A stretch of DNA of 64,000 nt from Botryllus schlosseri (GCA_051294905.1 CM119379.1:18848001-18912000); one strand, 5' to 3'; positions 9,812-58,261 are shown, counted from the first letter of the stretch. The notes: a model not told the origin generated them from the letters alone. A program made the numbers and translations.

Positions 9812-10144
9812 ATGGGAAAGTCACCATTGCAATGCGACTGTGAGCTGAAAGAAAAATCTTCGGCGCTCCAAGCTCTGCCTTACGCGCCCGATGGGGGCGG
9901 ATTAGACGCGGTGGAAGAGGAATATGAAGTCAGTCGATTGCTGCACGAACTCATGGCTATTATTCCGAAGAAAAGTGAAAAGAGCCCGTCTGAGGCAGTT
10001 CGAGAAACCGATACCGTAGCCGGCGTTATCGACTACATACTGTATCTTGAAAAGCAAGTCGGGCACGAAACGACCGCCATGTTGAAGAGGAAGATGTGTC
10101 TCGAATTCCGCAGATTGCTACGACGTAAATCATCCGACGCATGA
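9812..10144 (+). CDS. Id: Id/emc-like HLH protein lacking a basic region (Id-A), divergent, 110 aa, apparently single exon
   Basis: Helix 1 EVSRLLHELMAIIP, loop, helix 2 ...VIDYILYLEKQV carrying the Id-type VIDYI signature. An acidic rather than basic stretch precedes helix 1. N-terminus MGKSP resembles Id-B MGKAISP. TATA upstream; AATAAA at 10915-10920. Confidence 0.8.
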   Translation: MGKSPLQCDCELKEKSSALQALPYAPDGGGLDAVEEEYEVSRLLHELMAIIPKKSEKSPSEAVRETDTVAGVIDYILYLEKQVGHETTAMLKRKMCLEFRRLLRRKSSDA

Positions 10145-13140
10145 AAACTAAGGCGGCGCAGCTATGCCGGAGAAATGCAAGGGTATCCGCGGAAGCGGAT
10201 TGCGAATCACTGTAAAGTTTGCCAAACAGTAACTATGCATCGTTTACTGACAATATGTGAAGGTTCGCCCAGAATGACAAAGGCCAAGGTGGGCACTGGT
10301 TTCCAAGATGGTGGATGGTGGAAGTTTTTTGACATCGTATACGGGTTACATCTGATTTATAGTTTGTTGTACTTTTCGCCATTTGTTAATTATATAATCT
10401 TGAATGCCACGGAAAACACGTTTTATATCGAATGTATGTTTCGAAGCTTCGGAGATATAAGTTCAGTCAGTGCCAGCGGTGACGAAGCGTAGCATATCAT
10501 GGGTGAACGCTGCATGGGAACTGGGTATTGCGCATATATCCGTTGTCTATAGCGCTCACAAGTGCGACCGGAACATTCTCAGGAGTAATTCAGGCGTTCT
10601 TGTTCTACCGCAAAGTAATTCAATAGATATGTGTAATGACTATGGTCACTGCGATATTGAGTTGGCCAAGAGCAGAGCAATCGTAACAAACGTGGATATT
10701 GATCTTAATCGGGTATCTGCGATAGCTACCACTAGTGATGCGCCTACGTATGTCTGCAAGTGGTTGGATCAGGGATTCCAAACTGTGTGCCGCCCCATAA
10801 TCTCAGGTATTCCGCGAATCTATCTATAATTTGGAATATGACTGCACAATACTTTCAGGGCGGATGTATTGCTTCGTATCCGGATATGACCAACAACCCC
10901 TCTGCATTATCTGCAATAAATCCTTAGTTAACGAGTTTCCAGGAAGCTTAACAGAAATTTGAAGAAAAATCATGCAAAATTACATAATAAACCTAAAGGA
11001 TATTTCGCGCACATGAAGTCATGACTTTAGCTACTAGCTCATGATCGCTCCAAAAGCAATCAAAATCATATGGCCATTAGCATTTTCGTGAATATATGAA
11101 TATCGCTTTTATGTTTTGGCTGGAATTAAAAGCTCGAAACGACGGAAATACATGTATGTTTGTCAGCAAAACAGCAATGCAACATCGTTTCAGTCGCAGA
11201 CATGATCGTGTTCGTATAAACAAGCTCATCAAATATTTTTCTAGTGTGCCACAAGTTAAAAAGGTCTGACATCCAGTGCGCCAGATAACCAAAATCAGCG
11301 GATAATCTTTCGCGTACGTTACGAGGTAGGCTGAATCTATCGTAAGGCGTAATGATGTTAACGGTTCGTCAAAAGGGCCTGGCAATATGATTCCACGTTG
11401 ATACAAAAGCACGAATGAAGATGTCCAAGCGCAATCGCCAACATCGAATACTGTTTAGTGTTTACTGACGTGCTGTCGCAAGCCAAGCGACTTATCGAAA
11501 CGGCACATGAGAACCGTCTACCGGTGCCCAGGAGGCGACTTCACACGAGCCAGATGCTGAGCCGGGATAACGCACGGATATGCGACAGCATTGCAACTGT
11601 TCTCTGTATCGCAACAGTCGCGTGACTCGCGTTTGTGACAACTGTCGTGACGACATCTGCACTGGGCAACTGTATTGATAATCTAACCGTATCCTTCCAC
11701 GTCACCGCTGTGCAGCGTCACCGACTCAGGAATATCGGCCATACGCCTTGCAAGCGGTAATGAATGATGGGGTTTACAGTGCCTAATCCGCATGAGTCAA
11801 TAAGTCATCTTGAATCATCAGTATTGGTATTTTACTATGATTACCACCGAAAAAATAAATACCGCTCATCTTGGAATGTACCGCTGCCGGTAGACAATGT
11901 AACTAACAATTTATGTGTGATAAGACTAGTAATGCATGGCACCCGACAACATCTAACCCCAAATGAGCGATACCAAAAGTCTACGATAGTTGACAGGTGA
12001 GATCAATCCATGACCTTTCGTTACCGTGGAAGAAACGTTACTACTTTTAATTTCTATCATATTTTTAATAGGCCAATTTCCAAGTCAGTTTTAGTAAGTC
12101 CCCCTCGATCAGTTAATGCGTAAGATCAGAGGCCGGTTAGTAGCCTCTTTGCCAAATGCAATTTCTGTCAGTTGTCTTTGAATGTTAAACTCTATGAGAA
12201 TTTGAACTGATATGTATCAGTCTGTGCACCGTCAGCTACCTTCAGCGGGAGCTAACATCAGCTAAGTGAGCGTCTTGGTCCGTATAAGCTTTTTATGTCT
12301 GGGTTTCGGTGAAATCATAGCCTCACAGTGAAACCGTGACGCTTCATTTCCATTAAAATATGTATTCCGATTTCATCCCGAGTACTTCACTACCATCCCA
12401 CGTAGCATGTATTTTATATGCGTCACAAGCAGTGACGTGCGGTCCAATGAGGCGGGTGAGGCAGTGCCTCACCTGTCGTCTGGGTGAGTAAGTGAAAATC
12501 GTGAAAACCCTCGATGAGTCGATGATTATTGATGTTTTACATCGATGTTTATAAATAACTAAATTTGAACATTTTATTCAGCCAACATCATCAATTTGCA
12601 TTATTATTAAAAATACTGCGCGAAAGGAGAAGTGAGGCACGGGCGGATCGTGCCTCACCTGCGACAATGCAATTCCTCATAAATAGCTCGGAATTCATAA
12701 TAACTGGTATCAATCAATGCTATCGTCACACTGATTCCGAAAATCCAAATATTTACATTGTCAGGAGTGTCAGGGCACCAGATCCCCCCAAAATTGTCAA
12801 AGACGGTGACATTAGGTTTTATTACCGACAATGCTATCGCAGAGAAACAATGGCCAGGTGAGGCACAAACGAATCTGCCTTATGCACTATTCGCTAACAA
12901 TTGGACAATCGAAGCGCAGTAAAACACGCTATCGATTTCGGAATGCAACAGTTTTGTGGGAATTACATAGCCGCGACGGCCAATACGTAATGCAGAGCCA
13001 ATACATTCCCTTACTTATGTAGCTGTTATGTATTTTCCATCCACACCTACATACCTTACGGTATGTGATAGCCACTTGCATAGGCTTCATTGTTGTTGTC
13101 TGTGTCCTTTATGCTGTGTTCGACTGCTATACCTATACAA

Positions 13141-13703
13141 TAGAGGTCGACCGATTATCGACATGGCCGATTATCTAGGTCGATATTTAGAGCTTTCTCG
13201 ATTAGCGATATCGGCCTATGAAGGCCGATATCGCGGCCGATATTTTATATTTGAAAAAAATTCAAAAATTTCGGAAATTCAATGCTCCGTGTTCTCAATC
13301 TCAAGAAATCGACTATGCAAATGGCGATATATGACAGATTACCCTTGCAGGACGAGTTTAGCTGGGTGAGCATGCAGAGAAACAATGCTTCCTGCATTAC
13401 AATTTACCTTTTCTGGACTGATCTGCAATTCTGTATCATATTTTGCTTTTTGAGTTATCCCAAATTTCATCGAATGTGCACAATTAAGCAATAATTCTTT
13501 TCAATTTCAGTTTTCTCGTTTGTTGTTCAGCTTTCTGTGGCATGTACAAGTGCCATCTTGCCTAATATATAATATTTTTGGTGAAATTGTTCTCTGCCCC
13601 TTCCATATTAATATGGGCCTATGATATCGGTATCGGCCTTGTGAGTGAGCCGATATATCGGTATCGGTATCGGCCTGTAAAAATCAATATCGGTCGACCT
13701 CTA
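13141..13703. mobile_element. hAT MITE with ATCGGC arrays, nested in 12430-14231
   Basis: 15-bp TIR TAGAGGTCGACCGAT. Perfect TSD CTATACAA at 13133-13140 and 13704-13711. Confidence 0.92.
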
Positions 13704-14126
13704 CTATACAACCCTTAATTGTGATATGTGACAGCTATACTTACATGGCCTGCGTTGTCGTTGTTTGTGGTCAGTGGTGCCACTTCCAGTGTTTTTACAC
13801 CAGATATAGTGTATTTTGACTTGACCTAGTGTCCTAGTGCATTTTCTTTCGAAATTCGACAAATCCAGTGTTTTTTTACTGAAAAAATATCTGTAATCTA
13901 TTTTCATGTGCTTCGAATAATTTATACCGGTACTTGAAGAGATAGTAAATATTATCCGTCTAAACTTGCCCATTTAGCACAATAGCGACCAGTCCTACAT
14001 GTATTGAAGAATGTGGAATTGCAAGGGCTATCAGTGTGCTGTGCAAGAAAATGCTCTCTATACGCGCTGCTGTTACTCACATTTCGCGTCTCTTTATCAG
14101 GTACTTTACGTGCGTTCGTGCGTATT

Positions 14127-14128
<2 letters not shown>

Positions 14129-14163
<35 letters not shown>
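14129..14163. repeat. (TG)n microsatellite
   Basis: About 17 uninterrupted TG units followed by degenerate TG repeats. Confidence 0.95.
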
Positions 14164-14165
<2 letters not shown>

Positions 14166-16789
14166 ATGTGTATGTGCATGTGTGTGGGGTGGGCGTGCCT
14201 CACCAGCCATGAACCTCACCGCACGTCACTGGTCACAAGCCACACGTTACCTACTCGTTCGTTACTGCTTTTAGACCACACCAATCGCCAGATGCCTCAA
14301 GGTATTTTCTTACGCCCAACCGCACATGAGTGCTCAAAAACTACGGCGTGGTCACTAATATGTGCGGTCTCTTCATTTAGTAACGAGTCATTTTTTATTG
14401 TTATGTTGTTTTGTCTCCGATCTCAACTGTAATACTTCGAATTTGTGCTCGGTATTACCATCTAGCGGTTGTGTATAGTGGATTAGCACCGTGAGAGGTT
14501 AATTTCTCCTAAATACCGATGTAATGTGACAGCGTGCAACAGTTGTGGCGTGAGCTGGTAAATATATACACTCGAGTTACAAGTGGCGATGACACCAGAA
14601 AGGCAGGTGCTACTTCGAAACACATGTTGCCTGCGCCCTCTTTGACGGACAGCTGCAACCTACAAAAGGCCGTTGGTATTCGCTGATTGAAAGATGGTCA
14701 TTGGTGAACTGTTTTCATACCTGAAGAAATAATGTTTAAAGTCCGAGTACTGAGGATGACGAAATCTTGATTAAATTACTGCCTGATTAATTTCCATTTA
14801 GGAAAAGCAACAAGTCGTTTGTTTGAATTGCAGCACACACTGAGCCATTGTTTCTGTGACCTCTCTCATGGGCGGTGACATAGAGCGTAGTGTTGAAAAT
14901 TTCGTGACAGTGATATACGATCGCTGAAAGACGTTGTGTAGGAAGCACATTTCCGCAATTCGAAGTTAATCAATGAAATCGCCTTTCCTTTTGTTCCGAC
15001 TTCGATTGTTTGATGTCAGCCGAGTTTAAGATCAATACTTTTGATCGATACGGCATCGGAAGCATGGTGCAAAGACCGGGTGACTTGATTTTTGGTTTAA
15101 AGGGGAATTAATGCGCGCAATAAAACTAAATGTGTGTATAAAACGCGGGTCAATAGTTTAATCTCGTTCGTAATTGGAACATGATCGATGCCGTAAATGG
15201 AAAAGTAGAAGCGGCTAACGTTGAAATCATGGCGTCGTTGAGACTTTACTGTGATATTGCAATATACATGTAGCCCACCGCATAAATAGGATTGGCCGCG
15301 GTCTCACAGTGACGTCATAGATTCCGAAATAATATCAATACTTTAATCAATTTAATCAAACAGTGTGCGTAATTCTCAGTAGTGCAACGAACAGAAATTC
15401 GATGCTTTTCTCTAGCCATCACCATGTCCTATAGATATCTCCATCCATCACTTTCACGTTGGTCGATGGATGGCTGGATGCCTGTTGGCTTAGAATACAT
15501 GCAATCTACCCATCTAACATCTGTCCACCTCAAATATGCCCGAGACAAGCAATGTAGAAATGTTGCTTATTTGAATTCTCACAATTATTATTATCGCAAC
15601 AGAATAAACAGTTTTGCGGTATCTCTGAAGGCTTTAATAGGTCTCGGATTTTGAAATTCCGCTCACTTGTAACTGCTATTTACTCCATTATGCCATCTAG
15701 CGGTGGAAAGTTACCGGCAGGTTATATTGTTGGGAATGGGATCAATGCTTCAAGCTTGCATTTAGAAAAGAGTATGGTAATGCCTACTGTAAATATTATG
15801 ACATGGAGCACTGCAGATTTTACGAATAAGTCACTGGTGAAGGCAAGATCCGTGTGTTTTCGATATTGATCGGTCATCTGCACAACGCTGGCGTGCGGCG
15901 TCATGTAATTCCCCGGCGTGCATATTTAAACCCTGTCTCCGCGAATTTATTAACAGCTTGCCAGACATGTTTTAGTCACATCTGGTAAAACCCAATTTGT
16001 ACATTCTGTCGCGAACGCATGGTTGATCAATTAATATCGGCTTTTTCTTATCGGTCTTTAATGACCACCCATTTCTTAACGACGCTTTAAGATTTTCCCT
16101 CTTTTTTGCGCAATTTCGGTTTTCTTAATACTAAAGCATGCCACCGAAAAAAATTTGTCAATATTATGCATCGGGGATTTGGCTTGTGTAAGCGCGTGGG
16201 GATACGCTCATGCATTATTCAGCGTTTCTCTGAAAACATCGAAAACTTTCATTGAATTTGCTGTCCGCGAGACGTGGTCTAGATCTGCCACGCGGTGCGA
16301 ATGTGCGTCGGTGTATACTGTATATTCTTGCAATAAACACGGGCTAAAGTTACCTCGGTGTAAGCCGTCTGTAAGAAAAGTAATCAGATGCATCTGCATG
16401 AGCTGATCCCATACGCCTGCCGTTTATCACCTGTCAAAGCACTCGCAAACGGCTGGCGCGTTGAAAACCGGTTCGGATTTGCTCTGCTCTGCGTACATTA
16501 CCCGCATCTGTGTTTGCCGTATGCCGGGCGAACCCGGCTGCCGGACAGCGGCGGGTCGGCCGCAGTCTTCTAATTGATCTGTAAAATTAGCGAAGCAGAT
16601 GCCGAAGCCGCAACAGGTGAACAGAAACGCGTAGGCATATGGCTATTTAACGGAATATGGATCCCAACGCGAAATTACGCGGGCTGTTGAACTTGCGAAA
16701 GCCCACACAATCAATTCCGAACTTTGATGGCCCGCGAGAGCTTATGTCCACGTTACGCTGAATGTACGCACATGTAGCCAAAGTCGCTA

Positions 16790-17313
16790 CTCATGTAGAA
16801 GTAGCGACCCAAATTGCTACTTTATTACAAGTATAAGTGACTATTAACAAGACATTTCACTACTACCTAAAGTGGAAGTAGATAATGAAAGTTGTGAAAA
16901 GTACTCAAGTATGTAGTTTCAAAAAGTAGATCTGATGGAGCGATCGCACACTGTTAGCAGTTATGTGAGGCGGCTACCTTCGAGATCGCGACTAATGCGA
17001 AATGCCTATTGACATTATACAAATAGGTGCAATCATCATATATATCTATATATAGTTACGTTACAGGGTTCGCGCGGTTTCACTCATATATTTCACTTCA
17101 ATTTCACTCATAAAAGCGAAGCAGACTAGTACCGCTAGTACCGAAATTACTTTTTACTTTTCGAAATCCAGGGTTTAAAAAGTTAATGGACTTGTCTAAA
17201 AAACGAAGAGGGATAAATTAAAATCATAACCAATCGCATATGAAGTTTAAATAGGAAAAACGTGTACTTGAGTACACGGGAAAATGTCAGTACTTTTTTA
17301 CTGACCACCTCTA
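16790..17313. repeat. Degenerate AAGTA/TACTT-rich MITE remnant
   Basis: AAGTA-rich left part and TACTT-rich right part ending ...GACCACCTCTA. Similar fragment at about 17860-18050. No clear TSD. Confidence 0.4.
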
Positions 17314-19732: not shown

Positions 19733-19765
19733 AGACACAGGTGTCTCCCGGCGCCAGGTCGTCTG
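19733..19765 (+). promoter_or_regulatory. Composite E-box + BMP-responsive element, module 1
   Basis: AGACA-CAGGTG(19738-19743)-N6-GGCGCC(19750)-AGGTC-GTCTG. Confidence 0.7.
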
Positions 19766-20304
19766 CTAACTTTCGTTCGGTAAACTCACCGGTAGTTTGT
19801 TTTTCTTTTCATTTCGTTGGCTCCCATCACAACCGAATACCGCCGAACACTGAAATTGCCAATAAGCGATATACCGCAAACTGTGAGCGTTAATTTGACG
19901 TAGCAACGACCGAGTGGAAAATTTTAGCTTCCACTACACGCAAGGCAAGGTTCTGCGAAGCAAAGTCCGGATTACAACGGTGTAATGCGGGCGGATATAG
20001 TCCTATTGTTTCAATAAGGAGTACAAACACAGAGAGCAAGTATTTGTTTCCGGACGCCGCGCGCAGGTGTCGCAATTCACAGCGTAGAATTTACACAGGG
20101 CGCCGCTACTTTTGATTACGACAGGCCAATCCCATGTTGCGTCCTGAAGTTCAGTCAGGTAAGCGACTTTCTTTGACGCAATCAATGACGGCTGGGTCAC
20201 TCTGATACCGTTCTCTTGCTACGATTGAATCCAAATGCTTAATTCTACAATGTACCGTACATGGCCTTGACCGTTGACCAATGAGTCAATGACCGTGGAA
20301 AAAA

Positions 20305-20735: not shown

Positions 20736-21426
20736 ACACTGGCCCACTGCCCACTCACATTTCCAACAACCCAGGTGGATTTTGACGTGTAGGTTGTTGT
20801 TGATGGCGTACCACCATACGTTGTGTCGTCGTTTCAATTTTAAAATTGATTTACATTTTCATCGGCTCCGGTCACCCTTGCGTGTCAAAGAGAATTCTTG
20901 GCGTTCACCAGATCGTGTTTTCTTAACAATTTCCATGCAGCCTTGACGCATAAGCGCACACACCAATTACGATAATGGCGAAAGTGGTTTTGTTTGGAGG
21001 AACATCGGCCGCGCGATACCAGTAAACAGTTTATGTCACGATAAACCTATAAATATATATCTCCGAAATTATTCGCGTAAAATCTGTTTTCGCGTGTTTA
21101 CACCCGACCCCGGGCGAACGGTGCTAAACGTAAACACGCGTCGACTTCTTACGAATCGCGCGATTAGCTCTACTAAATGATGGGATATTTATAATGTCTA
21201 ATTGGACCGCACTTTGTTACGGGAATACCGTAACCTTTCCCAATCGCCGTCGGCACCACGACATCGTTGAGCCTGCGAAAAGAAACGGCCGCTATCTCAG
21301 CCCGAATCAGACGCGCGTTTTCATTCCGTCGCCGCGTCACCTGTACTCACACTTCAGCCGGGCAAATTGATAAGGCTGATTGTTTATGCGAGCCTCATCT
21401 CAAACGGTCGTACATGCGATCGCATG

Positions 21427-21457
21427 AGACACAGGTGTCTCGGCGCCAGCCAGTCTG
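21427..21457 (+). promoter_or_regulatory. Composite E-box + BMP-responsive element, module 2
   Basis: AGACA-CAGGTG(21432-21437)-N4-GGCGCC(21442)-AGCCA-GTCTG. Confidence 0.7.
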
Positions 21458-22915
21458 ACCGAAAGACGCTCTCGCCTACATTATCCGCGCCTCTAACTTT
21501 CGCTCGATCAGGTGTAGCACGATTCGCAACACAAAGAAACAAAACCTCGAGAACGCGCCAGCAACAGGTGAGATGTTTATAAGTAAACCGACCTGGCGTC
21601 GCCAAGGTACTTAACACGTGTTTAACGCCTTATATACAAGTCACAATTCATTGATGTGATTTTCGGATCTCCGAGAGATAAACCGGTACAATCGTAGGAA
21701 TGTGGATTAAGCGTATGACGGAATTTCGTTATCAAACTAATTCCACGGGAGTAAGTCGGAGATTTCGACCGCATCACTGGCAATAAAGCCACGCAAACTC
21801 TTTTGGACATACACCCAAAAGAATAATACATTAATGAGGCGGATTCTCAGATTGTATTAATGCGGTATCGCTATCTTTGTATGCTCTATTTGTTGGCACG
21901 TGTGGGCCAGGTGTCCTGGCGTGTACTAATTTACAACTTCGCACAAATGACAGTGGTTGCGGATGGCTCGCTAATTTACGTCGTGCCTAAGCCGCAGACG
22001 TTGAGAAAAGTAGCACCTTTTTAAAAGATTTGGGGTGTCTATGTGTGGAAGTAATCTGGTTCATTTCAATATTTTTCGGTGGAGGATTTTTTTATGCATA
22101 AAGTAGAGAATTATGCGGCATTACAGTTGATAACATGCCCGGCAAACAATTTTGTCAAATTATGACAGCTATAATTTGCACCGAAATTATATCTCGATAC
22201 ATTGGCTACGTTACAATACGAGCCATGTTCTGGTAGCATGGCATTGGCTACAAAAGATTCATTTTTTGATAAAAATCATTTCATCATACAAAATAAAAGC
22301 TGGCAATTTTGTGTGACATTTACAGGTACAATCAAGACTGATTCGGTAGTATTTCAGCTGAGCGCCTGTTTGGTTATGGAGCTATAGCGAAAAATACAGC
22401 CAGGTTCACTTTGCCACTAGCGCTTGTTTAAAATTTATCATTTAGTTATCTCGAAGATAGTAACATAATTGCCCCTGCGGTTGTAGGCTAATAGGGGCGT
22501 GTTGCGTAGCGACGGAAATGCGATTTACCGAATTCTGCAGAGTCGATAAGATCGTGGCGGGTTTTAAACCTCAACTTTTTAATCATATTACAAGTTCCCA
22601 AATCTGCTCGTGTGCCCACGTTACCGAATTGGAGTCATGCGGATCTTTATAATATCGCGATTTAGCCTTTCCTGGTTGTATTATGAGCGACTGTCTGTTA
22701 TCGAGCGGTATTTACATGATCCTAGTCACCGCCTCGAAACGGCGAACTTGAAAGACGAAATGCGCCTTGACGGTTATTTGTTCACAAAAAAGAACCGCAA
22801 TAAAGTTACGCGGGGTGCAACGGCCCGTGAGATTCCAAGGCGTAATCTGTTTCATACCACCAGCTCTCGACAACGGCACGAACAAAGAAGATGCGCGAAG
22901 GGCCTGACTCGCGTG

Positions 22916-22941
22916 CAGGTGTCGAGGCGCCGCGGCGTCTG
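22916..22941 (+). promoter_or_regulatory. Composite E-box + BMP-responsive element, module 3
   Basis: CAGGTG-N4-GGCGCC(22926)-GCGGC-GTCTG. Confidence 0.7.
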
Positions 22942-23525: not shown

Positions 23526-23534
23526 TATATAAAA
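23526..23534 (+). promoter_or_regulatory. TATA box of Id-B
   Basis: TATATAAAA about 90 nt upstream of the ATG at 23623. Confidence 0.65.
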
Positions 23535-23622
23535 CCAAGGCGCGACTGCCCACGGGTCATAGTAAGTCGCAGTACCTGAAGTGTCGATATCTTTAAGCTG
23601 CACGTTTGGATTACACGGAAAC

Positions 23623-23940
23623 ATGGGCAAAGCAATCTCGCCAAGACCCATCTCTACAACCACTTGCAGTGAGTGTCTCACCAAGCTGTCACCTAGCTCG
23701 ATCAAAATCAGCAGGCAGGAAGGATTCGAAATTGGTGACTTGCTTCACAAATTGAAATCCGTGGTGCCGGCTGTATCTACGAAATCAACTGAGGAGTTGT
23801 CGTCTTTGGAGATAATGCAACACGCGATCGATTACATATACGACCTGCGTTCGACGTTGATAGAAGCGGAACAGGAAAGTTTCAGCGCTGCAAGCAATAC
23901 GGTTGCGACAGAGCATGTGACTGTCGCCAGTGTATGTTAG
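23623..23940 (+). CDS. Id: Id/emc HLH inhibitor of DNA binding (Id-B), 105 aa if unspliced
   Basis: N-terminus MGKAISPR...LSPSSIKISR resembles vertebrate ID2/ID3 (MKAxSPVR...LSxxSLxIxR). HLH LLHKLKSVVP...SSLEIMQHAIDYIYDL; no basic region. First ATG is 23623 (the ORF track starts at an upstream GTG). Confidence 0.93.
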   Translation: MGKAISPRPISTTTCSECLTKLSPSSIKISRQEGFEIGDLLHKLKSVVPAVSTKSTEELSSLEIMQHAIDYIYDLRSTLIEAEQESFSAASNTVATEHVTVASVC

Positions 23941-25228: not shown

Positions 25229-25262
25229 CAGGTGCGTTGGCGGCCTTGGCGCCAGATAGTCT
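25229..25262 (+). promoter_or_regulatory. Composite E-box + BMP-responsive element, module 6
   Basis: CAGGTG-N4-GGCGGC-CTT-GGCGCC(25248)-AGATA-GTCT. Confidence 0.65.
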
Positions 25263-29513: not shown

Positions 29514-29537
29514 GTATAGTGGGCTCGGTCTACGCTA

Positions 29538-29862: not shown

Positions 29863-30494
29863 TAGTCTATGCGTACCGTATTTTTGCGCTTTATTGCAGT
29901 GATACGCGAAAAGCCTGTTACAACCCTGAGATATATCTTTGTATGAAATGGCACGTTTGACTAATTTGCACCAACTGGAGCGGTTGGGAATGCAAAACGT
30001 TTTACCGGAAAGTGATGCTTTATTTACCCTTCCGGTAGGACGGAAATCGTTAGATCACACGATTTTCGTTTGACGTTCGGAGATGACATGGTCATAGATC
30101 CCGGCTGCAGTACTTTCTAAGTTCCAATCGACGACATCATGAGCTGATAAGATGCGAGCGTCGTTTGTATGTTGACTTGAAAAGGGATGGGATTTGGGGA
30201 TTTAATCGGGATTATTCATATTGGGATTCGGATTTACAAAGTTTGCGAGACGTAGGATTAGGACTTGGGGTGTGAACACGAAAAATGCCGAACAATTTCT
30301 AAGTTTCATATGGGTTTGAATAAATTTAAACGGATAACGAATACAAACTTGAATTAGGAAGAGGAGGCGGGTGGTAACGTGGTTGTTTAATCCACCTTTA
30401 ACGGCGCGTGTCGATTAAAGCCTCGGTATTAGTATAGACGTGTCGTAGGTTTATCTGGGCTCTTCCGTCATTTGTGTTAATGTGGCATCTAGAC

Positions 30495-31790
30495 CAGTGG
30501 TTCTCAACCTTTTTCACCTCGCGGACCTGTAAAATTTCAAAAAATGTCTGGCGGACCGTTGAATTTTTAAAATTGGAATGAAGCCAAAATGTAGAGTATG
30601 CAACCGTTTTCTGCAATTATATGGTGCTAGAGAGCAACATTTAGAGGGTTTTGATCTTAATTTATTATCTTCATGATGGCATCCAGGTGATTTTATGGTA
30701 GTCAGTCTGCTGAGTCAACATAAAATTGCCTTGTCCAGATAAACGTGCCGTTAAACGTCCAGATAAACGTTGAGAGTCGTTTACAAACGTTCGCGCCGAA
30801 GGCCGTGGGTTTAACCGACCACGCCAACTTGAATAATATCCTTCTCTTTGACAATATCGAGAGAACAAGCGTTTCGGAGTCGAACCAAGCACCTTGTCGT
30901 TCCATCTTGCTCATTGCCCACTACCAGCAGACGCATAGGCTACTCTGGCAACTACGAATACTATGCGTGCCGCAAGAAAACACCTTACAGCGACTATACC
31001 ACCCCCAGACCCTACACTTGGGTAGATGTTTTCACCTGTACTTGTGAGCACACTCATTCAACTCAGTGTCAGCAGAGAGTTTATGTTGCATCATCGCGCC
31101 AATAGCGAAAATTTTCGATCATTCATGTCTTAATCGGGTTTCTCGCTGCCGAATTTTGCCACACCGTTTGGAGTCCCATGTTAGCCTTAACGTCATTATG
31201 TGTTGGTACGTCGTGGTGCGGTAATGCCTGACGCCGAAATGCCTATTTTTATAAATCATGCGTGTTTCTCGGAGAAGGGCTCCTAAACATTTAGTGACAC
31301 TAAATCGCGAAAAGCGCGAAAAGAAATTGAAAAATGTTGGGGAAAAAGTTTCAAAAAAATACACCATGATTTATGTTCATTTTCAAAATAATTTTGGGCT
31401 CTTTTGAAGCTCGTCCCCTCTCCAATTGGGTGGTTTGAGGGAACCCGTTACGGTCCTGCACAAAATTAATGAATCAAAAACGAGTGATTGCGCAAACTGC
31501 GCTGTTTAGCGACGAGTCAGCTCGTATCTGTTATGTACTTGTCGCTCGCATGTCGTCTAATGACACGTCCTGAACTTGAAGTCAAATCAAACATGTTTCC
31601 ATAGCCCTAATGTTACCTCACGAAGTTCTGAATTATTTTAAAATTTGATGTTTTATTTATTTTATTATTGGACACGCCTTTAACATTGCATCTTGAACTT
31701 GTGGTATAAAATTGTAATATACCTGGCGGACCGACAGGAATGTCGTCGCGGACCGGCACCGGTCCGCGGACCGGCGGTTGAGAACCACTG
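30495..31790. mobile_element. Non-autonomous hAT-Charlie element
   Basis: 15-bp TIR CAGTGGTTCTCAACC. Perfect TSD ATCTAGAC at 30487-30494 and 31791-31798, matching the NTCTAGAN target preference of Charlie elements. Confidence 0.92.
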
Positions 31791-32349
31791 ATCTAGACGT
31801 AACGGCCCAGGGAAAAACCCATACGCAACAAGAGAATGAAAGAGCAAGGAAACGTCAGAGAACAACAGCAGATCATGGACAATATCAATTATACACTGGG
31901 TCGGCCATTGTTACAATGTGGAATTGTGGATCTTAGATTGATAGACCGTGCTTGATCATTTCGACATCCTCCTAACTGTTCATGGAGCCACATTGTGTGT
32001 TATGTATGGTGTTGTATGTTGTGTGTCTAGCGCGGATTCAAATAATTGCGTACAATTACGTATTTCTTTGTACAAATGAAGTAAAATGCAATGAAAAACT
32101 CGGCTCAGAAGCAGCGGACGTCAAAGTTTCTGAAGAAATCGTGGAATTTGGGGGTCTAGTCAAAGTGATGACCTTTATTCCTTTTAGTCAACACCGCACA
32201 TTACCGGGAAAATACGGGTATATCAGGAGTCCATCCGAAGTGATGAAGTAACAGTACTTCATTATGCGGACCACCTCTGATTGTTGATCTTTATGATATC
32301 GAGGTAATGCATAATTTTGAAACTTGAAACTTGCTCAATTCTAACGCTG

Positions 32350-41887: not shown

Positions 41888-43661
41888 ATAGGTACAAGAG
41901 CAATCAGAAATTTAATTCCATTTGCATCATGCATCCATGCATTCATGAATATATACACAGCTTCTTTGTTTTGACTGAAATTAAAAGCTGTGCACGAGAG
42001 ATAATGCTTGTAATTGAAGACGAAACGCGCGTATGTTGGCAACAGTGCAATGTAACCTTGTTTCAGTCGTATATAGGTTCGCATAGATAAGCATGGTCTT
42101 TGAATTAACACATCAATTTTTCTTTTAAAGGGCAACTTTTTTGTAAGTGTGCCACGAGCGTTTCATAGTGTTGCCAGTGTGCCAGAAGTCAAAACAGTTT
42201 GGGAACCACTGACCTATCCCATCAATTCAAATGTGTCGACTCTAATTGCAAATTGCTTGTTGACTTTCTCATATATTAGAACTTCTGAATTGGCATGTTG
42301 AAGCAACGGAATGAGAGGACAAACTGTTATCAACAAGTACGTGCACATCTGTACACTGCGCAATTGTGCAGCCACTTCCCGGAAAGGGATTTAGGAGCCT
42401 GGCCTGGCCCGGATGTGATGTATCAATTTCGCCAGGCATGACAATCCAATTTGCTGTTATAAAAATTCACGGCACGCCTGCTTTCATCATCGACGGAAAT
42501 ACAATCAGCTGGTGTTTCACGTTGTCACATATACTTGCACTGAGTGGTTCTCCAATAAACCAACGCCGCGGAAGTAGAATTATCACAACCGTGTAGCACC
42601 CATGAAATTGACAGACATTCAAGTAATACATCTTCAAATAAAGGCAACAGCAACTAGCACGCGCAAATCTCAACGGCAAACGCATAGCGGACGATTAGGT
42701 AAACTGTTTCTTGACCAATTTCCGGCTCTCGACAGTCTCAACGACTATTCATTTCCGAACGCGGTAGATTAGATGTTATCGGGGTTTGATATCACCGGCA
42801 TGCATTGCGATAGTGTATACGGTACTTCGCCACTGATGTATATCCCAAGTTTGCAGTGACCGCATAGCATAATATTTGTACGGGAAGTAACGCGCGACAG
42901 AACGGCATCGTATAAAACCTCGCCCATTGTACAACATGCAACTTCAGTCTGGTAGATGGCGTAGCTCTATTCGGGTGTTGGAGAAGTCAAATATTTGTAT
43001 GAATCCGTTACTATACCCTGGCAGATACTAAGACCAACCAAAGATGGGATTTTACAGCAATTGTCGCCTTGTCAACGCCAATCAAGCTCTTTCATCAAAC
43101 GACAAATATGCTAAACGGAGTTACATCATTAAACGTTCTGATGCATTTTACAGGGACTTCGGGAAATCGCCGGCGCCAATTCAGACATACTTATAGTCGA
43201 CAAATGTGGGCATTATTTCAGTATTTGTGATCTGTAGACTTATTATATGCATTAAATTCACTAAGAAAATTCATAAATGGTAACTGTTAACGTCGTTTGA
43301 TGTGCTATAAAATTACCTGGTGCCCGCCAAATGGTGCCCACGGCAGAATTGAAATGCCTATAATTCACAAACCGACGAGATAACTAGCATCGATATTAGA
43401 AAAGGATAGAGTCGAGGTATAGGAGACATTAAATATTTTGGCATCACCCGTAATCAAAGTTAGCGCTCTGTTCTCTTTCTTTTTGCTTTACAATATTCAA
43501 CAAGCATAGTCAACATTACCATTTAGATGGGACTCCTAATTTATTTTGTGCCGTCGTCGTATATACTTACTACACAATACACTGGGCATATTTAACCTAT
43601 AAGAATACCTAGAATACCTAATGTATCTATTTATAGATTTGACGGATGAATGGGTCATCAT

Positions 43662-44966
43662 CAGGCCTGTTTATTTTTGGATTTCTCCAAAAATAACAAA
43701 AATAGCTTATTTTTGGATGTTTTCAAATTTTATTTTTGGAGAATCTCCAAAAATAAGAAATGAAGTGTTTTGAGCACTATTACTACTGAAAAAATCCACC
43801 AAAAGTATGTTATTATCATGTATTCAAGTCCTCCAACACATATAGATATCATCAGTGATCTTGATCTAACTTTCCAATAGCCCTACATTCTTCACAAATT
43901 TATAGTCTTTGGCCTGGAGAATGCCTTGTAAAGAATATTAATCACTGCGAGACGCCCCGCCGAGACCCTCCTCCCCCGTGATTTTAGCTATATCGGGCTC
44001 GAACGTCGCAATTGTGCGAAACATAGAGGTTAGGGGTCCAAAAATGAAGGAATGTCTAACTCTTCAAACTTTCCAATCTTCCAAGCCTTTGCTCCTGAAA
44101 AGCGCTCGTCAGTAATGCGCTTGAAACCTCTGATCCTCCACGAAGTTGCGTGCCTCATTGAACTTGACAGCCCGACACCCTCTGACCAGAAAACCTTCCT
44201 TGTGGCGGTCCTCGTTGTCCCAGTCCTTGCCTGGACACAGAGCTCGAAGGCGTTCGACTAGGCGCATGAGCTCCTGCTGCTCCATGATCAGAACGTCAAG
44301 ACCATGAAGCTTCGTGACGGTGGTGCTCAGCTCTGTGAGAGCGTGACCATGCGATCGAGAACGATCAGATGGATCCACCGCTGCAGCGAAGGTGCACACA
44401 CCGGACTGTTTTCGTCCATAACATCAAGGAGTTGGTATACGGTTTCCAGTCAACCAAGAGGCCATCCTCTTCATTGACAATAAACGAGCGTCAACAAACT
44501 TGGGGCGCGCACTTTTCATCTAGCGGATCAAGTTGTATTGTCGTCTGAAGCATCAGCAGATCAGTCCCGTCATCGTGTGGACGAACTGATTGTGACAGAG
44601 GTGGCGGTATATGATTTCGTCGTTCCCTTTGCCTCACTCAAGCTGCCTTCCCGTCTTCTCTACGTGTTGCACTGTGAAACTTATAGGAGTACAAAGGCGG
44701 AGGGGCGAACAGGCAAGGTCAGCAGAAACGTGAAGTGGATTGAGTGGAAGTAGTTTTAGCGTTTCGGTTACCCCCGCCCTCACATAGATGCTGTTTTTGT
44801 GTGTTTTTATGAGTTTTCTGGTCGTTTACATCGCTCTGACTTGTTTATTTCACTGAAAAACTTGAAAAAACATCATCCAAAAAAATCTTATTTTTGGATG
44901 TTTTCAAATCTTATTTTTGGAGAATCTCCAAAAGTAATACCCAATATCCAAAAATAAACAGGCCTG
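43662..44966 (-). mobile_element. Internally deleted hAT element
   Basis: 21-bp TIR CAGGCCTGTTTATTTTTGGAT. Perfect TSD GTCATCAT at 43654-43661 and 44967-44974. Multiple TATTTTTGGA subterminal repeats; GC-rich coding-like interior. Confidence 0.92.
44100..44620 (-). pseudogene. Frameshifted hAT-like transposase remnant
   Basis: Reconstructed across stops and frameshifts: QFVHTMTGLIC*CFRRQYNLIR*MKSARPKFVDARLLSMKRMASWLTGNRI/QLLDVMDENSPVCAPSLQRWIHLIVLDRMVT/ELSTTVTKLHGLDVLIMEQ. DARLLSM sits where the hAT TRW-S-M motif is expected; codon use is GC3-rich. Confidence 0.6.
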
Positions 44967-45201
44967 GTCATCATGGAACTAATGTCCCCGGATAACGTTA
45001 GGTCAGGACACGCCAGTATACCCCTTTAGAGCATCAGTTAAAGTTGTAACGGATATTTGCACAACACGCCTTTAATGCTGCTATGCTTCGAGGCCCTTTT
45101 ACAAAGCCAATGATATAATAATCAATACTCATGTACTTGCTACATTATCATCCGCCGCTATTTAATGTAGCAATGACACATTTGAAATTCACTATTATAC
45201 T

Positions 45202-46259: not shown

Positions 46260-46359
46260 ATTATACTTGTACTACGAGAGCACAGAATATCTAAACATTC
46301 TATAATAGGGCTTATCTCTTGACTATATACTTGGGAAATGTTGGTATTAATAACTTCAC

Positions 46360-51527: not shown

Positions 51528-51850
51528 GACCGACAAGATAGCGTAGCGTCGGGCTTCCTGAACGGTAGGTCGTGGGTCCGATCAAAAAGACCTGATGAGT
51601 AACACTGGTATCCATGTATTCCCTGCTTGGCGCTCATGAATGACTGGGATAGCATTCAGGGGTGGTGCAAGACATAGACAGTCATACAAGGCTATTTTAT
51701 CTGCACCTTCCTTGTCTAGCGGCATATGCACAATGAACATCAAGCAGTCATGGTATGCATATGCACAGATCGTGTGTATATGTATTGAACATCATGAGTC
51801 GGTATATATGCCGCAAAACATCAAGGATAAAAATAAAACTACGTTCTTTC
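51528..51850 (+). mobile_element. tRNA-derived SINE family B, second copy
   Basis: Colinear with 46360-46681 (TTCCCTGCTTGGCGCTCATG...TTTATCTGCACCTTCCTTGTC...GCATATGCACAGATCGTGTGTAT). Confidence 0.75.
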
Positions 51851-54800: not shown

Positions 54801-56009
54801 ACACAAGTTATACTTCAGGTTAGTTGTATTGTGTAGGATTTCGATACAAAATCATTCAACAAATATTGTATGCTGTATCGATGTGTAAACATACGTATAG
54901 GGTAAAATGATACAGTAAATCTCCTAGTACTAAAGTCATACAGCAACTGCTGAAACGTTATTTTCACTTATGATAAAGTACAACACAAAACAGTAGGAAC
55001 AGTAGCTAAAAGGTTCCAGCCGTCCAGAAAACTTTTCTGCATCATTCTGTCCTTACAAGATGAGCGCAATTGTAAATGGGTAAAAGCGACTATGAAGCTT
55101 GCACGGCCTCCTACGAGTTCATTGACCATTGGATGGATCGTAATTCTGTTACCATAATCACCTAAATTGTGTTGAAGCAAAAGAAATATTGCTCATTGCG
55201 TCATATCCTAACGCGAGACTGTATCCGAAATATAAGCGGGGAAATGTCCAAATTAACTTAAGTTTTTTAAGGGCAATTTTTTAATTCCCTTCCCGAGCAT
55301 TTTCACCGTATAAAGCGGTAGTTCGGCATATCCGGTATCAGAATTGAGCGGATTCGGCTGTATTTATACATGTATATTGTATATATCCAATGTCCACACA
55401 TATGTATCAATGATAAAATACTATGCCTGTCAAAGAGTAGTAGTCAAGTTCAGGGTGAAAGAGTATAGTAATTCGACGATAGCGAAACCTGCACATGAAA
55501 CAATTTGAACCGTTCCCGCATGTCAAGTATTGCGACTATGACGCAACTAGCAACGATCTAGTGCCCCGAAAATTACAATTCTCAATTCAGAAAACCTTCA
55601 TATGCGGTGATTAAACCGCCCACGTAATCGTGAATAATATACTGTTTCAGGATGATATTCAAATTCATGAGTGATTTGATGATGCGAAATGTGTGGGGTC
55701 AATTGAAAAAATCTGTGATAATCATATCTTTGAAAGATATTACATAGCAAATATGCATAGAATGGGGGGTACATAAAAGTTCACAACTCTGCCTCACGAT
55801 ACCTCTAAAATAGTTAGCAAGCGATCTCATCAATCACAGGATGGCAAAAACATATTCCATCAACACCCGCCAGTGGAAGAAGTCAATCCAACGCAGAAGC
55901 ATGGCTAATGAGTATCACCAGCTTAGTATATGCAGTAATTTTGCGGACGCTAGGTTAAATTAGATTTTCTGTGGTACCATTTAACTGCGTGGAATGTAGA
56001 AGTAGGTAC

Positions 56010-56429
56010 CAGAGATGAGCGGATTTGGAATTTCCATGTCCTAATCCAATCCAAATCCAAATCTTCAAATCTAAATCCAAATCCTACTCCATAACTTTTT
56101 CATATTCAAGTCCATGTCCAATCCTAATCCGATTCCAACTGTAAATTCAGGAAAAATACTAATTTATGCAAGGGAGGGATTGGAAAATTTTCTTTCACAG
56201 CCAACGATTGCCTTGATTCAAGGTAATCTAGTAACCATTAATGCATTTAAACTGATCTGAATAAAGTTTGTCGTCATTCGCCACACGACATATCAATCTC
56301 CCAGAAAATAGGTAAATCCAATCCAAATCCGTTCAGAAAAAAATCTCTAATCCTAATCCAATCCAAATCCGACAAAATTTCACAAGTCCTGTTTTTTCAA
56401 ATCCTAATCCTAATCCATGCTCATCTCTG
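56010..56429. mobile_element. hAT MITE with (AATCC)n arrays
   Basis: TIR CAGAGATGAGC / GCTCATCTCTG. Perfect TSD GTAGGTAC at 56002-56009 and 56430-56437. Confidence 0.9.
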
Positions 56430-57297
56430 GTAGGTACATACCCCTGACTGTAGACCGAAAGGAGAAACGCGGTTTTTCATGACACGATGTCATCACTGTC
56501 TAAGTCAAAATTATTTTGGCACCCTACTAATATCCCTACACCAAGCCAGTGGTCGCAAGAAGCCAATGAATCTGTTACGCTCGATGCTGGCAACGTATCC
56601 TTTGAATTCTAAACGTTGCAAAGACTGTATACTCCATTAAGAGTTTTGTGTGAGGCAGACGCTCTTCCCACTGATCAGTACACGGAACTTCGAAAAGTAT
56701 TCAACTGTCTATAGCTCATGTACATTGTACAGTACATAGTACATCTACTCCCTGCCTGCTACTCAGCATCTCTATATCATAATTGCCCGAAAACACTACC
56801 AATGATGGCGGATAGAGCCTAATGAACTGCAACGACGCAATATTTAGCTAAAACACCGACCCAAGTCTTGGACTTATATTCGTATTTTCGGTTAAAATAT
56901 AATCAAACAACACACTCTATCAAAGTATAAATATAAGAAAACAATAGTACGGTACAGATGTAAAAACGGAATGAAGGCAAGCAAGTACGCATACAGTAAA
57001 CAACTCCCCGTCTATAGTCTACGCGAAGTAGAATCGAGGTAAGGCCACGATCGGTTTGCCGCATGAAATATCATCACATCAGGAGTGTGCATCGTTTAAT
57101 AAAAGAAAATCTAGGTATATAAAACACGACATGTAGTCGGTCGGACATAGCTCGCTTTATGTCAGAATGCTTTGTTCGTTTTCCCACTCACTGGCGTCTT
57201 CGCATTGATTGGCGCGTATAAAACGGCGAGCATTCCGAGCAATCACTTTCACTGGCCAAGCCACATTTTCATCATCGGTAGGCAATGTTGATGCCGT

Positions 57298-58261
57298 TTA
57301 GCGACGGGATGAATTCGAATGGAAATCTCCTGGCACCGATGTATCCTGAAACGGAATTGGCGTGTTAAAACACACTGCACAGTCGACTACGTATGTATAT
57401 AGCAACGCAGTATAAGTATGTCACAACTAAATAAATCGCACTGATGCTTTATCAGCATCGGCGCCGTGTATAATATCGAAATTTTACGTTTGCATTGAAT
57501 AATTGTAGCTGTATTTCGAGATTTGGCGTTAACAAAAGGCGTTATGGGTTGGTGTGTTAGTTACAGAGAGCCGATTATCTTTATGTACAAATTTTAAACG
57601 TGTAAAAAACGAGCAATGCTCATTACTCACCGTCGGCGCAAGTTCCTGATTTCTCTTGTTATCGAGTTGCGCGAACGGGGCTCTGCTTTTCGTGCAGTGG
57701 GCCGACGACGAAATGGAAGATGATGAAATCACAGTGTCCGAATGTTCGAACTCTACCGGCATTTTACTTTCCAACATATCGTGCAAATCGCGTATGTAGT
57801 CGATCGCTCCCAAGACCACGTCCAGTGACGAGACTCGTTGCGGTTTTGATTGCGATAAGGCCGGAATTACCTCCTGTAACTTTCGGTATAGCGTCCTGCC
57901 AAAGACAATACAACTTCTAATAGAAATTCCTGTACGTTGATCTATTTCCAAATTTCAGCAGTCAGATCACAAGACAACACCAGGGCACGCATACAAGAAA
58001 CACAGCATAGACAGACTGCTATCTACAAATTTACCTCAACTCAGCGGTGTCTCCGTTGCCGTCGTCGGGTACGCTTGAAGACTGATTTCTTTGGGACATC
58101 CTCGCCCTGTAATCCCCGCAAAATTCATCTCGCAGTGCACGCAAGACTTTTGTCGACTGCGAATTTATCGGGCCGTCACTTTTAAAGCACACGGTCGACA
58201 GCCTAGACCCGTTCATATGCCGAGGTGAAAATAACAATGTATCTTTTCCTGCTTTCACCAT
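57298..58261 (-). CDS. Id: Id/emc HLH protein (Id-C), three coding exons: 58261-58035, 57895-57631, 57345-57298
   Basis: Intron 1 (58034-57896, GTAAAT..TTTGGCAG) joins ...DTAELR-TLYRKLQEVIP...SSLDVVLGAIDYIRDL in frame. Intron 2 (57630-57346, GTGAGT..TTTCAG, phase 0) follows D-box-like RAPFAQLDN. Last exon DTSVPGDFHSNSSRR*. N-terminus MVKA...FSPR. ATTAAA about 200 nt past the stop. Confidence 0.88.

What the first reader, a model, noticed from the sequence alone, without database searches (positions are those of the whole stretch)
9812..58261. Three-gene Id/emc cluster (+,+,-) in an otherwise gene-empty 64 kb
Seen: three basic-less HLH genes with the A/V-IDYI signature and no other recognisable host gene. 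Id-A and Id-B are tandem; Id-B and Id-C are convergent, about 33 kb apart. Established: most invertebrates have one emc/Id, and vertebrate ID1-4 are dispersed ohnologs. Inference: a lineage-specific cluster sharing a large regulatory landscape, with enhancer sharing or competition between paralogs.
Basis: partly seen in the sequence, partly recalled or inferred. Interest (0 to 1): 0.7.

Follow-up and report, generated by a model that had tools for sequence, protein, structure and literature searches.

The report
Sea-squirt Id gene cluster, three of seven
The three small genes are real members of the Id family (helix-loop-helix proteins without a DNA-binding arm), but they are only part of a seven-gene cluster, and this sea-squirt Id expansion was already reported for Phallusia and Ciona, so the find is solid but only modestly new.

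Summary
Observation confirmed. No other gene was recognisable in the 64 kb by Pfam on 86 ORFs, Rfam or a tRNA scan.

Two corrections:
- **Cluster size.** It has seven genes in about 117 kb of contig C9. The other four lie left of the window, and the scan noted them before (s1-246865). No Id-like gene turned up elsewhere in the 495-Mb genome.
- **Age.** It is not species-specific. Every type except Id-E has orthologs in other unnamed samples, most likely other sea squirts. Phallusia mammillata has six named Id paralogs, five on one scaffold. In Ciona, Emc, Emc2 and Bhlh-tun1 (now Id.a) are near neighbours on chromosome 7 (PMC9238270, PMC7693978).

Id-A fails Pfam HLH, but it belongs to a well-supported divergent subfamily (A/F/G, like Phallusia Id.f). 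RNA-seq shows it as a roughly 0.6-kb unspliced mRNA.

Id-B is flanked by four Smad/BMP elements (GGCGCC-N5-GTCT), each preceded by a CAGGTG E-box. Two of them sit in blocks conserved with Styela clava. The tight composite occurs five times in the genome, four of them in this cluster.

Enhancer sharing across the cluster was not tested. Verdict: a new member of a known kind.

The parts
9769..10400 (+). Id-A transcript: unspliced, about 0.6 kb. TSS at 9769. The 3' end near 10400 is approximate.
   Evidence: RNA raw reads of three runs from two studies give depth 8-19 over 9701-10500 and zero on both sides. Template-switch-oligo tails mark the 5' end at 9768/9769. No joints were seen. A TATA-like AATAAAAA lies about 30 bp upstream.
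9812..10144 (+). Id-A coding sequence: 110 aa, a divergent basic-less HLH of the A/F/G subfamily.
   Evidence: ORF. No Pfam hit on its own. It sits in the A/F/G clade (100/99), sister to P0021 (99/90). hhalign of the subfamily against canonical ascidian Ids gives 96%. The AF2 model has helices at 33-50, 65-83 and 85-109.
19738..19764 (+). Composite E-box + Smad/BMP element (CAGGTG, then GGCGCC-N5-GTCT), 3.9 kb upstream of Id-B.
   Evidence: It lies in a block 84% identical to S. clava L005:5042-5092.
21432..21456 (+). Composite E-box + Smad/BMP element, 2.2 kb upstream of Id-B.
   Evidence: It lies in a 38-bp block 97% identical to S. clava L005:7353-7390, which carries the same composite.
22916..22940 (+). 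Composite E-box + Smad/BMP element, 0.7 kb upstream of Id-B.
23526..23534 (+). TATA box (TATATAAAA) of Id-B.
   Evidence: Read directly from the sequence. Function is inferred.
23623..23940 (+). Id-B coding sequence: 105 aa, single exon, a canonical Id type.
   Evidence: Pfam HLH 24.1 bits against a cut-off of 20.7. Best PDB hit is ID2, E 7.6e-6. It is 65% identical to Styela clava LOC120345717 in the database search and 60% to the genomic ORF in tblastn.
25248..25262 (+). Smad/BMP element GGCGCC-N5-GTCT, 1.6 kb downstream of the Id-B ATG, with a CAGGTG 13 bp upstream of it.
58035..58261 (-). Id-C exon 1 coding part (ATG at 58261), ending at a GT donor. A TATA box lies at about 58334-58343.
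   Evidence: Sequence. The joined reading frame aligns without a break to ortholog P0008 across the junction (45% identity over 170 aa, E 1e-46).
57631..57895 (-). Id-C exon 2, carrying most of the HLH. The intron at 57896-58034 has GT..AG ends and is phase 2.
   Evidence: Pfam HLH 20.5 bits on the ORF and 21.7 bits in the genome scan.
57298..57345 (-). Putative Id-C exon 3: 15 codons plus the stop, after a GTGAGT donor at 57630.
   Evidence: Splice signals and translation only. Not verified by reads or by the ortholog.
12300..14300 (.). High-copy repeat between Id-A and Id-B. Not a gene of the cluster.
   Evidence: Logan contig depth 100-1000 with partial read matches. No Pfam family.
43651..44973 (.). 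Copy of a 1.3-kb interspersed repeat. A second, unrelated or related repeat copy lies at 30488-31797.
   Evidence: Dozens of copies at 90-96% identity across the genome. No Pfam family.

Best explanation
The three genes are the right-hand part of a seven-gene tandem cluster of Id-family genes on contig C9 of a sea squirt. From left to right the cluster reads Id-D(-), Id-E(-), Id-G(+), Id-F(+), Id-A(+), Id-B(+), Id-C(-) and spans about 117 kb.

Each gene encodes a 78-179 aa helix-loop-helix protein that has no basic DNA-contact region. By inference from the family, the proteins pair with E-proteins and tissue-specific bHLH factors and keep them off DNA, which delays differentiation.

Three subfamilies arose by tandem duplication before the ascidians sampled here diverged:
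- canonical types B and D;
- the C/E type;
- a fast-evolving A/F/G type with an extra conserved C-terminal helix, like Phallusia Id.f.

Id-B, and probably Id-D and Id-E, are driven by gene-proximal composite CAGGTG E-box plus Smad (GGCGCC-N5-GTCT) elements. This would make them BMP targets. Because an E-box needs the very bHLH activators that Id blocks, it would also put them under negative feedback.

Shown here: the genes, their family, the cluster, the absence of a basic region, transcription of Id-A, and the presence and conservation of the elements. Inferred: dimerisation, BMP response and feedback.
For: **Family.**
- A profile of all types hits ID2, ID1 (three entries) and ID3 as the top five PDB sequences, E 7e-11 to 3e-6, ahead of NeuroD1 and USF2.
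- 15 of 16 members and orthologs match Pfam HLH at E up to 1.
- Genome-scan HLH matches for D, B, F and C start at model position 15-19, so the basic part is missing.
- The 13 residues before helix 1 hold 0-4 K/R and no ERxR motif.

**Cluster.** Seven ORFs lie on C9 and nothing significant lies elsewhere.

**Subfamilies and age.**
- Tree supports: A/F/G 100/99, F 98/96, A 99/90, G 98/98, D 92/91, C 95/94.
- Reciprocal profile hits between the subfamilies; hhalign 96%.
- Two F/G-like genes sit head-to-head on one contig of another sample.

**Expression.** Id-A mRNA with a capped 5' end at 9769.

**Regulation.**
- Four GGCGCC-N5-GTCT sites in the window against 0.10 expected, all around Id-B.
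- The tight composite with CAGGTG occurs five times in 495 Mb, four of them in this cluster; the reversed control gave 0.
- The S. clava Id-B locus has five such sites, and two of the window's sites sit in conserved blocks.

**Literature.** Phallusia Id.b, Id.c and Id.e respond to BMP2 and to DMH1 (PMC9238270). Knock-down of the Ciona gene then called Id.a (Emc) raises its own expression (PMC7693978).

**Dimerisation.** Id-A residues 33-100 with the genome's own E-protein bHLH scored ipSAE 0.37 against a best control of 0.11. The tool rates this as weak support. The mark was reached by 51 of 78 solved complexes and 2 of 108 mismatched pairs, but at scores of 0.60 or under by only 5 of those 78. 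The runs agree in at least 83% of contacts, and partner pLDDT is at least 59.
Against: - Id-A alone has no Pfam HLH hit.
- The A/F/G-only profile ranks Pho4, USF and Tye7 above ID1 in the PDB. This subfamily is therefore clearly HLH but not specifically Id by sequence.
- SNPs seen in Id-A reads are 5 non-synonymous to 2 synonymous, including one in helix 1 (I50M). That fits weak constraint.
- Human ID1 and ID2 are not resolved relative to the ascidian types.
- No strict Smad element lies near Id-A, Id-C, Id-F or Id-G.
- Expression of Id-B and Id-C in this species was not checked, because only one reads call was available.
- Orthology to the named Ciona and Phallusia genes rests on my by-eye translation of two probe sequences.
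Confidence: 0.8

Rival explanations
1. The A/F/G genes, Id-A included, are not Id-type inhibitors. They would be a separate tunicate HLH class that arose inside the Id cluster and took on another role, through its conserved C-terminal helix and motif (LGxET/QN...L..NPxF).
For: - The A/F/G clade is long-branched and strongly separated (100/99).
- Its C-terminal motif is nearly invariant among the five G-type sequences and is better kept than the HLH.
- AF2 models it as a confident third helix at 85-109.
- PDB ranking is not ID-specific.
- No Smad elements lie nearby.
Against: - It shares the MGK N-terminus, lacks a basic region and sits in the Id cluster.
- Profile hits are reciprocal with canonical Ids.
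- Phallusia authors class the similar gene as Id.f.
- The E-protein pairing prediction gives weak support: 0.37 against a best control of 0.11.
Confidence: 0.25
2. One reading: the paralogs share one large regulatory landscape, with enhancers shared or competed for across the gene-poor intervals.
For: No recognisable genes interrupt about 139 kb between the CBM_14 gene at C9:18777250 and the snoRNA host right of the window (note s1-286578). The composite E-box/Smad element is almost private to the cluster.
Against: The elements lie within a few kb of individual genes and point the same way as those genes. The stretch tested between Id-B and Id-C holds high-copy repeats. Phallusia paralogs have different expression domains (PMC9238270). 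No chromatin or contact data were available.
Confidence: 0.25
3. Id-A is a decaying duplicate, transcribed but no longer functional.
For: No Pfam hit. The longest terminal branch among the three window genes, 1.0. SNPs at 5 non-synonymous to 2 synonymous.
Against: The 110-aa ORF is intact, the mRNA is discrete and capped, and A-type orthologs with the same layout exist in two other samples (P0020, P0021).
Confidence: 0.1

Closest known systems
Ascidian Id paralogs: Phallusia mammillata Id.a-Id.f, and Ciona Id.a (formerly Bhlh-tun1), Emc and Emc2
   Same: - Multiple small basic-less HLH genes.
- Physically linked: five of six Phallusia genes on scaffold S104, and three Ciona genes at KY.Chr7.1153, 1157 and 1158.
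- Phallusia Id.b, Id.c and Id.e are BMP-regulated.
- The family includes a divergent Id.f that resembles the A/F/G type here (PMC9238270, PMC7693978).
   Different: There are seven members here, against six named in Phallusia and three in Ciona. The spacing is much wider: 117 kb, against about 9 kb between two Ciona genes. No recognisable genes lie between members, whereas three 'unrelated' models are reported in Ciona. One-to-one orthology was not established, because the named sequences could not be fetched.
Vertebrate ID1-ID4
   Same: HLH without a basic region, an MKA/MGKA-type N-terminus, and the (A/V)IDYI helix 2. ID1-ID3 are the closest solved structures. GGCGCC/GTCT Smad elements lie near the gene, as at vertebrate Id promoters (the vertebrate part is from my own knowledge).
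   Different: Vertebrate IDs are dispersed ohnologs; these are tandem duplicates. The tree does not resolve the relationship. The A/F/G type has an extra C-terminal helix that the ID-type rows lack in the alignments made here.
Drosophila extramacrochaetae and amphioxus Id
   Same: The same group D family.
   Different: These are single-copy genes. The table in PMC9238270 lists one amphioxus Id. No sequence was compared here.

Membership tests
Id/Emc (bHLH group D) | An HLH domain | tested here: met
   Pfam HLH scores: Id-B 24.1 and Id-D 26.8 bits against a cut-off of 20.7; Id-C 20.5-21.7, which is borderline; Id-F 24.1. Id-A passes only through profiles: hhalign 96%, hmmsearch E 0.02 with a canonical-only profile, and an AF2 helix-loop-helix with pLDDT about 90 in the helices.
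Id/Emc (bHLH group D) | No basic DNA-contact region before helix 1 | tested here: met
   HLH model matches start at position 15-19 of 53. The 13 residues before helix 1 hold 0-4 K/R, are net acidic in five of seven genes, and have no ERxR motif.
Id/Emc (bHLH group D) | Closer to ID proteins than to other bHLH classes | tested here: inconclusive
   Met for Id-B alone and for the all-type profile, where ID2, ID1 and ID3 are the top five. Not met for the A/F/G-only profile, where Pho4, USF and Tye7 rank above ID1. Atlas features put an ID-4 cluster joint first for Id-A at 0.88, which is below the trust level.
Id/Emc (bHLH group D) | Heterodimerises with E-proteins and blocks their DNA binding | tested here: inconclusive
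   Id-A HLH with the genome's own E-protein bHLH (L028:118-324) scored 0.37 against a best control of 0.11, rated weak support. The mark was reached by 51 of 78 solved complexes and 2 of 108 mismatched pairs. Contact agreement is at least 83% and partner pLDDT at least 59. Blocking of DNA binding is not testable with these tools.
Id/Emc (bHLH group D) | BMP/Smad-responsive regulation (typical of the family, not defining) | tested here: inconclusive
   Met at sequence level for Id-B (four sites, two in conserved blocks). One site each lies upstream of Id-D and Id-E. None lies near Id-A, Id-C, Id-F or Id-G. The response itself was not measured.
Ascidian Id.a-Id.f set | One-to-one orthology with the named Ciona and Phallusia genes | tested here: inconclusive
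   Only Phallusia Id.e and Id.f probe sequences were readable. Translated by eye, Id.e looks canonical and Id.f looks A/F/G-like. The Bhlh-tun1 paper PMC6788811 is not held.

The most novel reading that the evidence does not exclude
The A/F/G genes (Id-A here, Phallusia Id.f-like) are a tunicate-only HLH class born inside the Id cluster. Their conserved extra C-terminal helix would give them partners or a function different from classical Id inhibition. The composite CAGGTG + GGCGCC-N5-GTCT element, almost private to this locus in the genome, would be a dedicated BMP-plus-feedback switch for the canonical members only.
Probability: 0.2. Interest if true: 0.5.

Novelty: new member of a known kind. 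Interest (0 to 1): 0.35.

Why it matters
Id proteins time differentiation downstream of BMP in all animals. Sea squirts turn out to carry a tandem Id expansion independent of the vertebrate ID1-4 set.

A chromosome-scale view adds three things to the published Phallusia and Ciona gene lists:
- an order and orientation map of seven genes in three subfamilies with no intervening genes found;
- a candidate conserved enhancer code;
- evidence that the most divergent member is transcribed.

This makes the question of subfunctionalisation after tandem duplication, as against whole-genome duplication, testable in a simple chordate. It is not a surprise to specialists.

Tried and rejected
- **Named chordate Ids for a tree.** The tree therefore holds only two human HLH fragments copied, and their place is unresolved.
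- **Species names.** The listing of cluster members gave no names for the orthologs, so their species are unknown apart from Styela clava.
- **Synteny in S. clava.** The 10 kb on each side of its Id-B ortholog holds no second Id, and more of that chromosome could not be fetched. The contig of P0005 was too large to serve.
- **Bhlh-tun1 sequence.** PMC6788811 is not held. A malformed call cost one look-up.
- **Fold searches with the Id-A model.** Foldseek against the PDB gave nothing at E 0.001 or better, and VIA-align gave only generic long-helix matches with Z up to 5.6. This is uninformative for a small helical monomer and is no evidence against HLH.
- **Complex prediction.** Weak support only.
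- **ORF 44109-44399.** I wondered whether it was an eighth HLH. It lies in a 1.3-kb high-copy repeat and has no Pfam hit.
- **zf-C3HC4 hit.** The hit at E 0.004 among 40 ORFs is at chance level; I guess it comes from a Cys-rich translation of the (TG)n tract.
- **Phallusia probe sequences.** The by-eye translation is marked as such.


Full report
**1. What is in the window.**

*Id-A.*
- It is a 110-aa ORF at 9812-10144 (+).
- A TATA-like motif lies upstream.

*Id-B.*
- Its ORF is 23581-23940 (+).
- The true start is the ATG at 23623 (MGKAISPRP...). Two orthologs begin the same way: P0001 and Styela clava LOC120345717.
- A TATATAAAA box lies 97 bp upstream of the ATG.

*Id-C.*
- It lies on the minus strand and has at least two coding exons.
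- A 139-bp GT..AG intron follows.
- Exon 2 (57895-57631) carries most of the HLH.
- The joined protein aligns without a break across the junction to ortholog P0008: 45% identity over 170 aa, E 1e-46.
- A third exon (57345-57298) is suggested by splice signals alone.

**2. Family.**

- Id-B passes Pfam HLH (24.1 bits against a cut-off of 20.7). Id-C is borderline (20.5). Id-A has no hit.
- Id-B's best solved relative is human ID2 (E 7.6e-6), followed by ID1 and ID3.
- A profile of all types puts ID2, ID1 (three entries) and ID3 in the first five places, ahead of NeuroD1 and USF2.
- HLH matches begin at model position 15-19, so the basic part is absent.
- The 13 residues before helix 1 hold 0-4 Lys/Arg and are mostly acidic.

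**3. The cluster is larger than the window.**

The window is C9:18848001-18912000. Searching the whole 495-Mb assembly with Id-B found a fourth gene 58 kb to the left. A profile search then found three more, giving seven in all:

| Gene | Position on C9 (kb) | Strand |
|---|---|---|
| Id-D | 18789.5 | - |
| Id-E | 18798.8 | - |
| Id-G | 18831.8 | + |
| Id-F | 18841.1 | + |
| Id-A | 18857.8 | + |
| Id-B | 18871.6 | + |
| Id-C | 18905.6-18906.3 | - |

- The only hit elsewhere is non-significant.
- hmmsearch over all 3,835 ORFs of 30 aa or more in C9:18748001-18932000 finds exactly these seven.
- A Pfam HLH scan of the genome finds 48 HLH exons, and no canonical bHLH lies near the cluster.
- After I had found the four left-hand genes, the scan's index showed them noted on the neighbouring window (s1-246865), with the same reading.

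**4. Subfamilies and age.**

Database searches returned orthologs for each type. All come from unnamed samples except S. clava.

| Type | Orthologs found |
|---|---|
| B | P0001, P0002, P0007, P0009 |
| D | P0003-P0006 |
| C | P0008 |
| G | P0010-P0013 |
| F | P0017, P0018 |
| A | P0020, P0021 |
| F/G-like | P0019, P0022 |

- A maximum-likelihood tree gives a strongly supported A/F/G clade (100/99). Inside it the supports are F 98/96, A 99/90 and G 98/98.
- Outside it the supports are D 92/91, C 95/94 and B 86/74. Id-E sits beside C (84/77). Two human ID fragments are unresolved.
- The duplications therefore predate the split of these species.
- In one other sample, two F/G-like genes lie head-to-head 4.5 kb apart on a single contig.
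- Id-A's membership rests on three results:
  - hhalign 96% between the A/F/G and canonical alignments;
  - reciprocal profile hits: the A/F/G-only profile finds D at 1e-10, B at 1e-9, C at 2e-7 and E at 6e-7, and the canonical-only profile finds F at 5e-4, G at 0.011 and A at 0.02;
  - a confident helix-loop-helix in the AF2 model, plus a third helix at 85-109.
- By sequence against the PDB, the A/F/G profile is HLH but not ID-specific.

**5. Expression.**

- RNA-seq raw reads from three runs of two studies cover 9701-10500 at depth 8-19. This is in a sample of about 6% of two of the runs and 13% of the third. Depth is zero at 8301-9700 and at 10501-12300.
- Template-switch-oligo tails place the 5' end at 9768/9769, and there are no splice joints.
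- Id-A is therefore a real, unspliced mRNA of about 0.6 kb.
- Variants seen in the reads are five non-synonymous and two synonymous, which fits fast evolution.
- Only one reads call was allowed, so Id-B and Id-C were not checked in this species.

**6. Other genes.**

- Of the 127 stop-to-stop ORFs of 75 aa or more in the window, I scanned the 86 longest non-Id ones against Pfam. The only hit was one chance-level zinc-finger match.
- Rfam gave no match at gathering thresholds, and there are no tRNAs.
- The same method applied to the flanks found a TGS1-like methyltransferase (C9:18750205) and CBM_14 genes (18763706 and 18777250) left of Id-D. It found nothing between the Id genes.
- No ORF in the 184 kb exceeds 186 aa.
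- The intervals are not empty DNA. Window 12300-14300 is a high-copy repeat. Two 1.3-kb interspersed repeat copies lie at 30488-31797 and 43651-44973.

**7. Regulation.**

- The Smad/BMP-type motif GGCGCC-N5-GTCT occurs four times in the window against 0.10 expected. All four are on the + strand, at -3.9, -2.2, -0.7 and +1.6 kb from the Id-B ATG.
- In the 184 kb there are two more. One is 2.3 kb upstream of Id-D and one 4.4 kb upstream of Id-E. Both point the same way as the gene.
- Each site is preceded by a CAGGTG E-box.
- The tight composite CAGGTG-N3-8-GGCGCC-N5-GTCT occurs only five times in the whole genome. Four of these are in this cluster, and the reversed control gave none.
- The S. 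clava Id-B locus has five sites with the same composite. Window 21425-21462 is 97% identical to L005:7353-7390, and 19737-19786 is 84% identical to L005:5042-5092.
- This agrees with note s1-253980 on the same window.
- It also agrees with experiments in Phallusia, where BMP2 induces Id.b, Id.c and Id.e and DMH1 removes or lowers them (PMC9238270).
- That the elements work here, and that the E-box gives feedback, is inference.

**8. Mechanism.**

- By family, these proteins should pair with E-proteins and class II bHLH factors and keep them off DNA.
- I located the genome's E-protein bHLH (C15:7323836-7324042) and asked for a complex with Id-A residues 33-100.
- The score was 0.37 against a best control of 0.11, rated 'weak support'.
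- The mark was reached by 51 of 78 solved complexes and 2 of 108 mismatched pairs, but at 0.60 or under by only 5 of the 78. Contact agreement is at least 83% and partner pLDDT at least 59.
- A solved ID-E47 complex exists, so a pass may reflect likeness only.

**9. Comparison with what is known.**

- PMC7693978 lists Ciona Emc (KY.Chr7.1153), Emc2 (KY.Chr7.1157) and Bhlh-tun1 (KY.Chr7.1158). Emc and Emc2 are about 9 kb apart, in opposite orientation, with three 'unrelated' models between them.
- PMC9238270 renames Bhlh-tun1 as Id.a and reports six Id paralogs in Phallusia.
- Its tables give the gene identifiers:

| Phallusia paralog | Gene identifier |
|---|---|
| Id.a | S104.g03275 |
| Id.b | S104.g03263 |
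| Id.c | S104.g03276 |
| Id.d | S104.g03273 |
| Id.e | S104.UNbHLH |
| Id.f | S448.g08865 |

- Five of the six are therefore on one scaffold. The same table lists a single amphioxus Id.
- My by-eye translation of the Id.e and Id.f probe sequences suggests that Id.e is canonical and Id.f is A/F/G-like.
- The expansion, its linkage and its BMP control are thus already on record. New here are a seventh member, the chromosome-scale map, the wide spacing with no gene found between members, and the near-private composite element.

**10. Verdict.**

- Novelty: a new member of a known kind.
- Interest is moderate to low (0.35).

Noticed in passing
C9:18831813-18832142 (L009:3837-4139) and orthologs P0010-P0013: The C-terminal tail of the G-type protein (ELEKELGRETIALLHSNPEFYKLF) is almost invariant among five sequences from different samples. 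It is better conserved than the HLH itself, and a weaker version is shared by the A and F types. AF2 models the equivalent part of Id-A as a confident third helix.
   Followed up: partly
whole genome; window 19738-19764, 21432-21456, 22916-22940; C9:18803530-18803554; C5:7423695-7423718: The composite CAGGTG-N3-8-GGCGCC-N5-GTCT occurs only five times in 495 Mb. Four are in the Id cluster. The fifth, on C5, was not examined.
   Followed up: partly
C9:18721225-18777390, left of the cluster: There is a segmental duplication with a period of about 29 kb. TGS1-like methyltransferase exons lie at 18721225 and 18750205. CBM_14 exons lie at 18737987 and 18763706 with identical scores, plus a third at 18777250.
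   Followed up: no
window 30488-31797 and 43651-44973: Copies of 1.3-kb interspersed repeats, at 90-96% identity to dozens of loci on many contigs and with no Pfam domain. The likely explanation is a non-autonomous transposon. The ORF at 44109-44399 lies inside one copy.
   Followed up: partly
L005:10001-11072 (Styela clava LOC120345717): The NCBI model of 195 aa splices away from the ORF after about 95 residues. The genomic ORF continues to a C-terminus like that of Id-B (tblastn aligns 108 aa over 10001-10324). The public model therefore looks mis-spliced, or is an alternative form.
   Followed up: partly
window 14100-14200: A (TG)n microsatellite gives Cys/Val-rich ORFs in two frames. It is probably the source of the chance zf-C3HC4 hit.
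   Followed up: no
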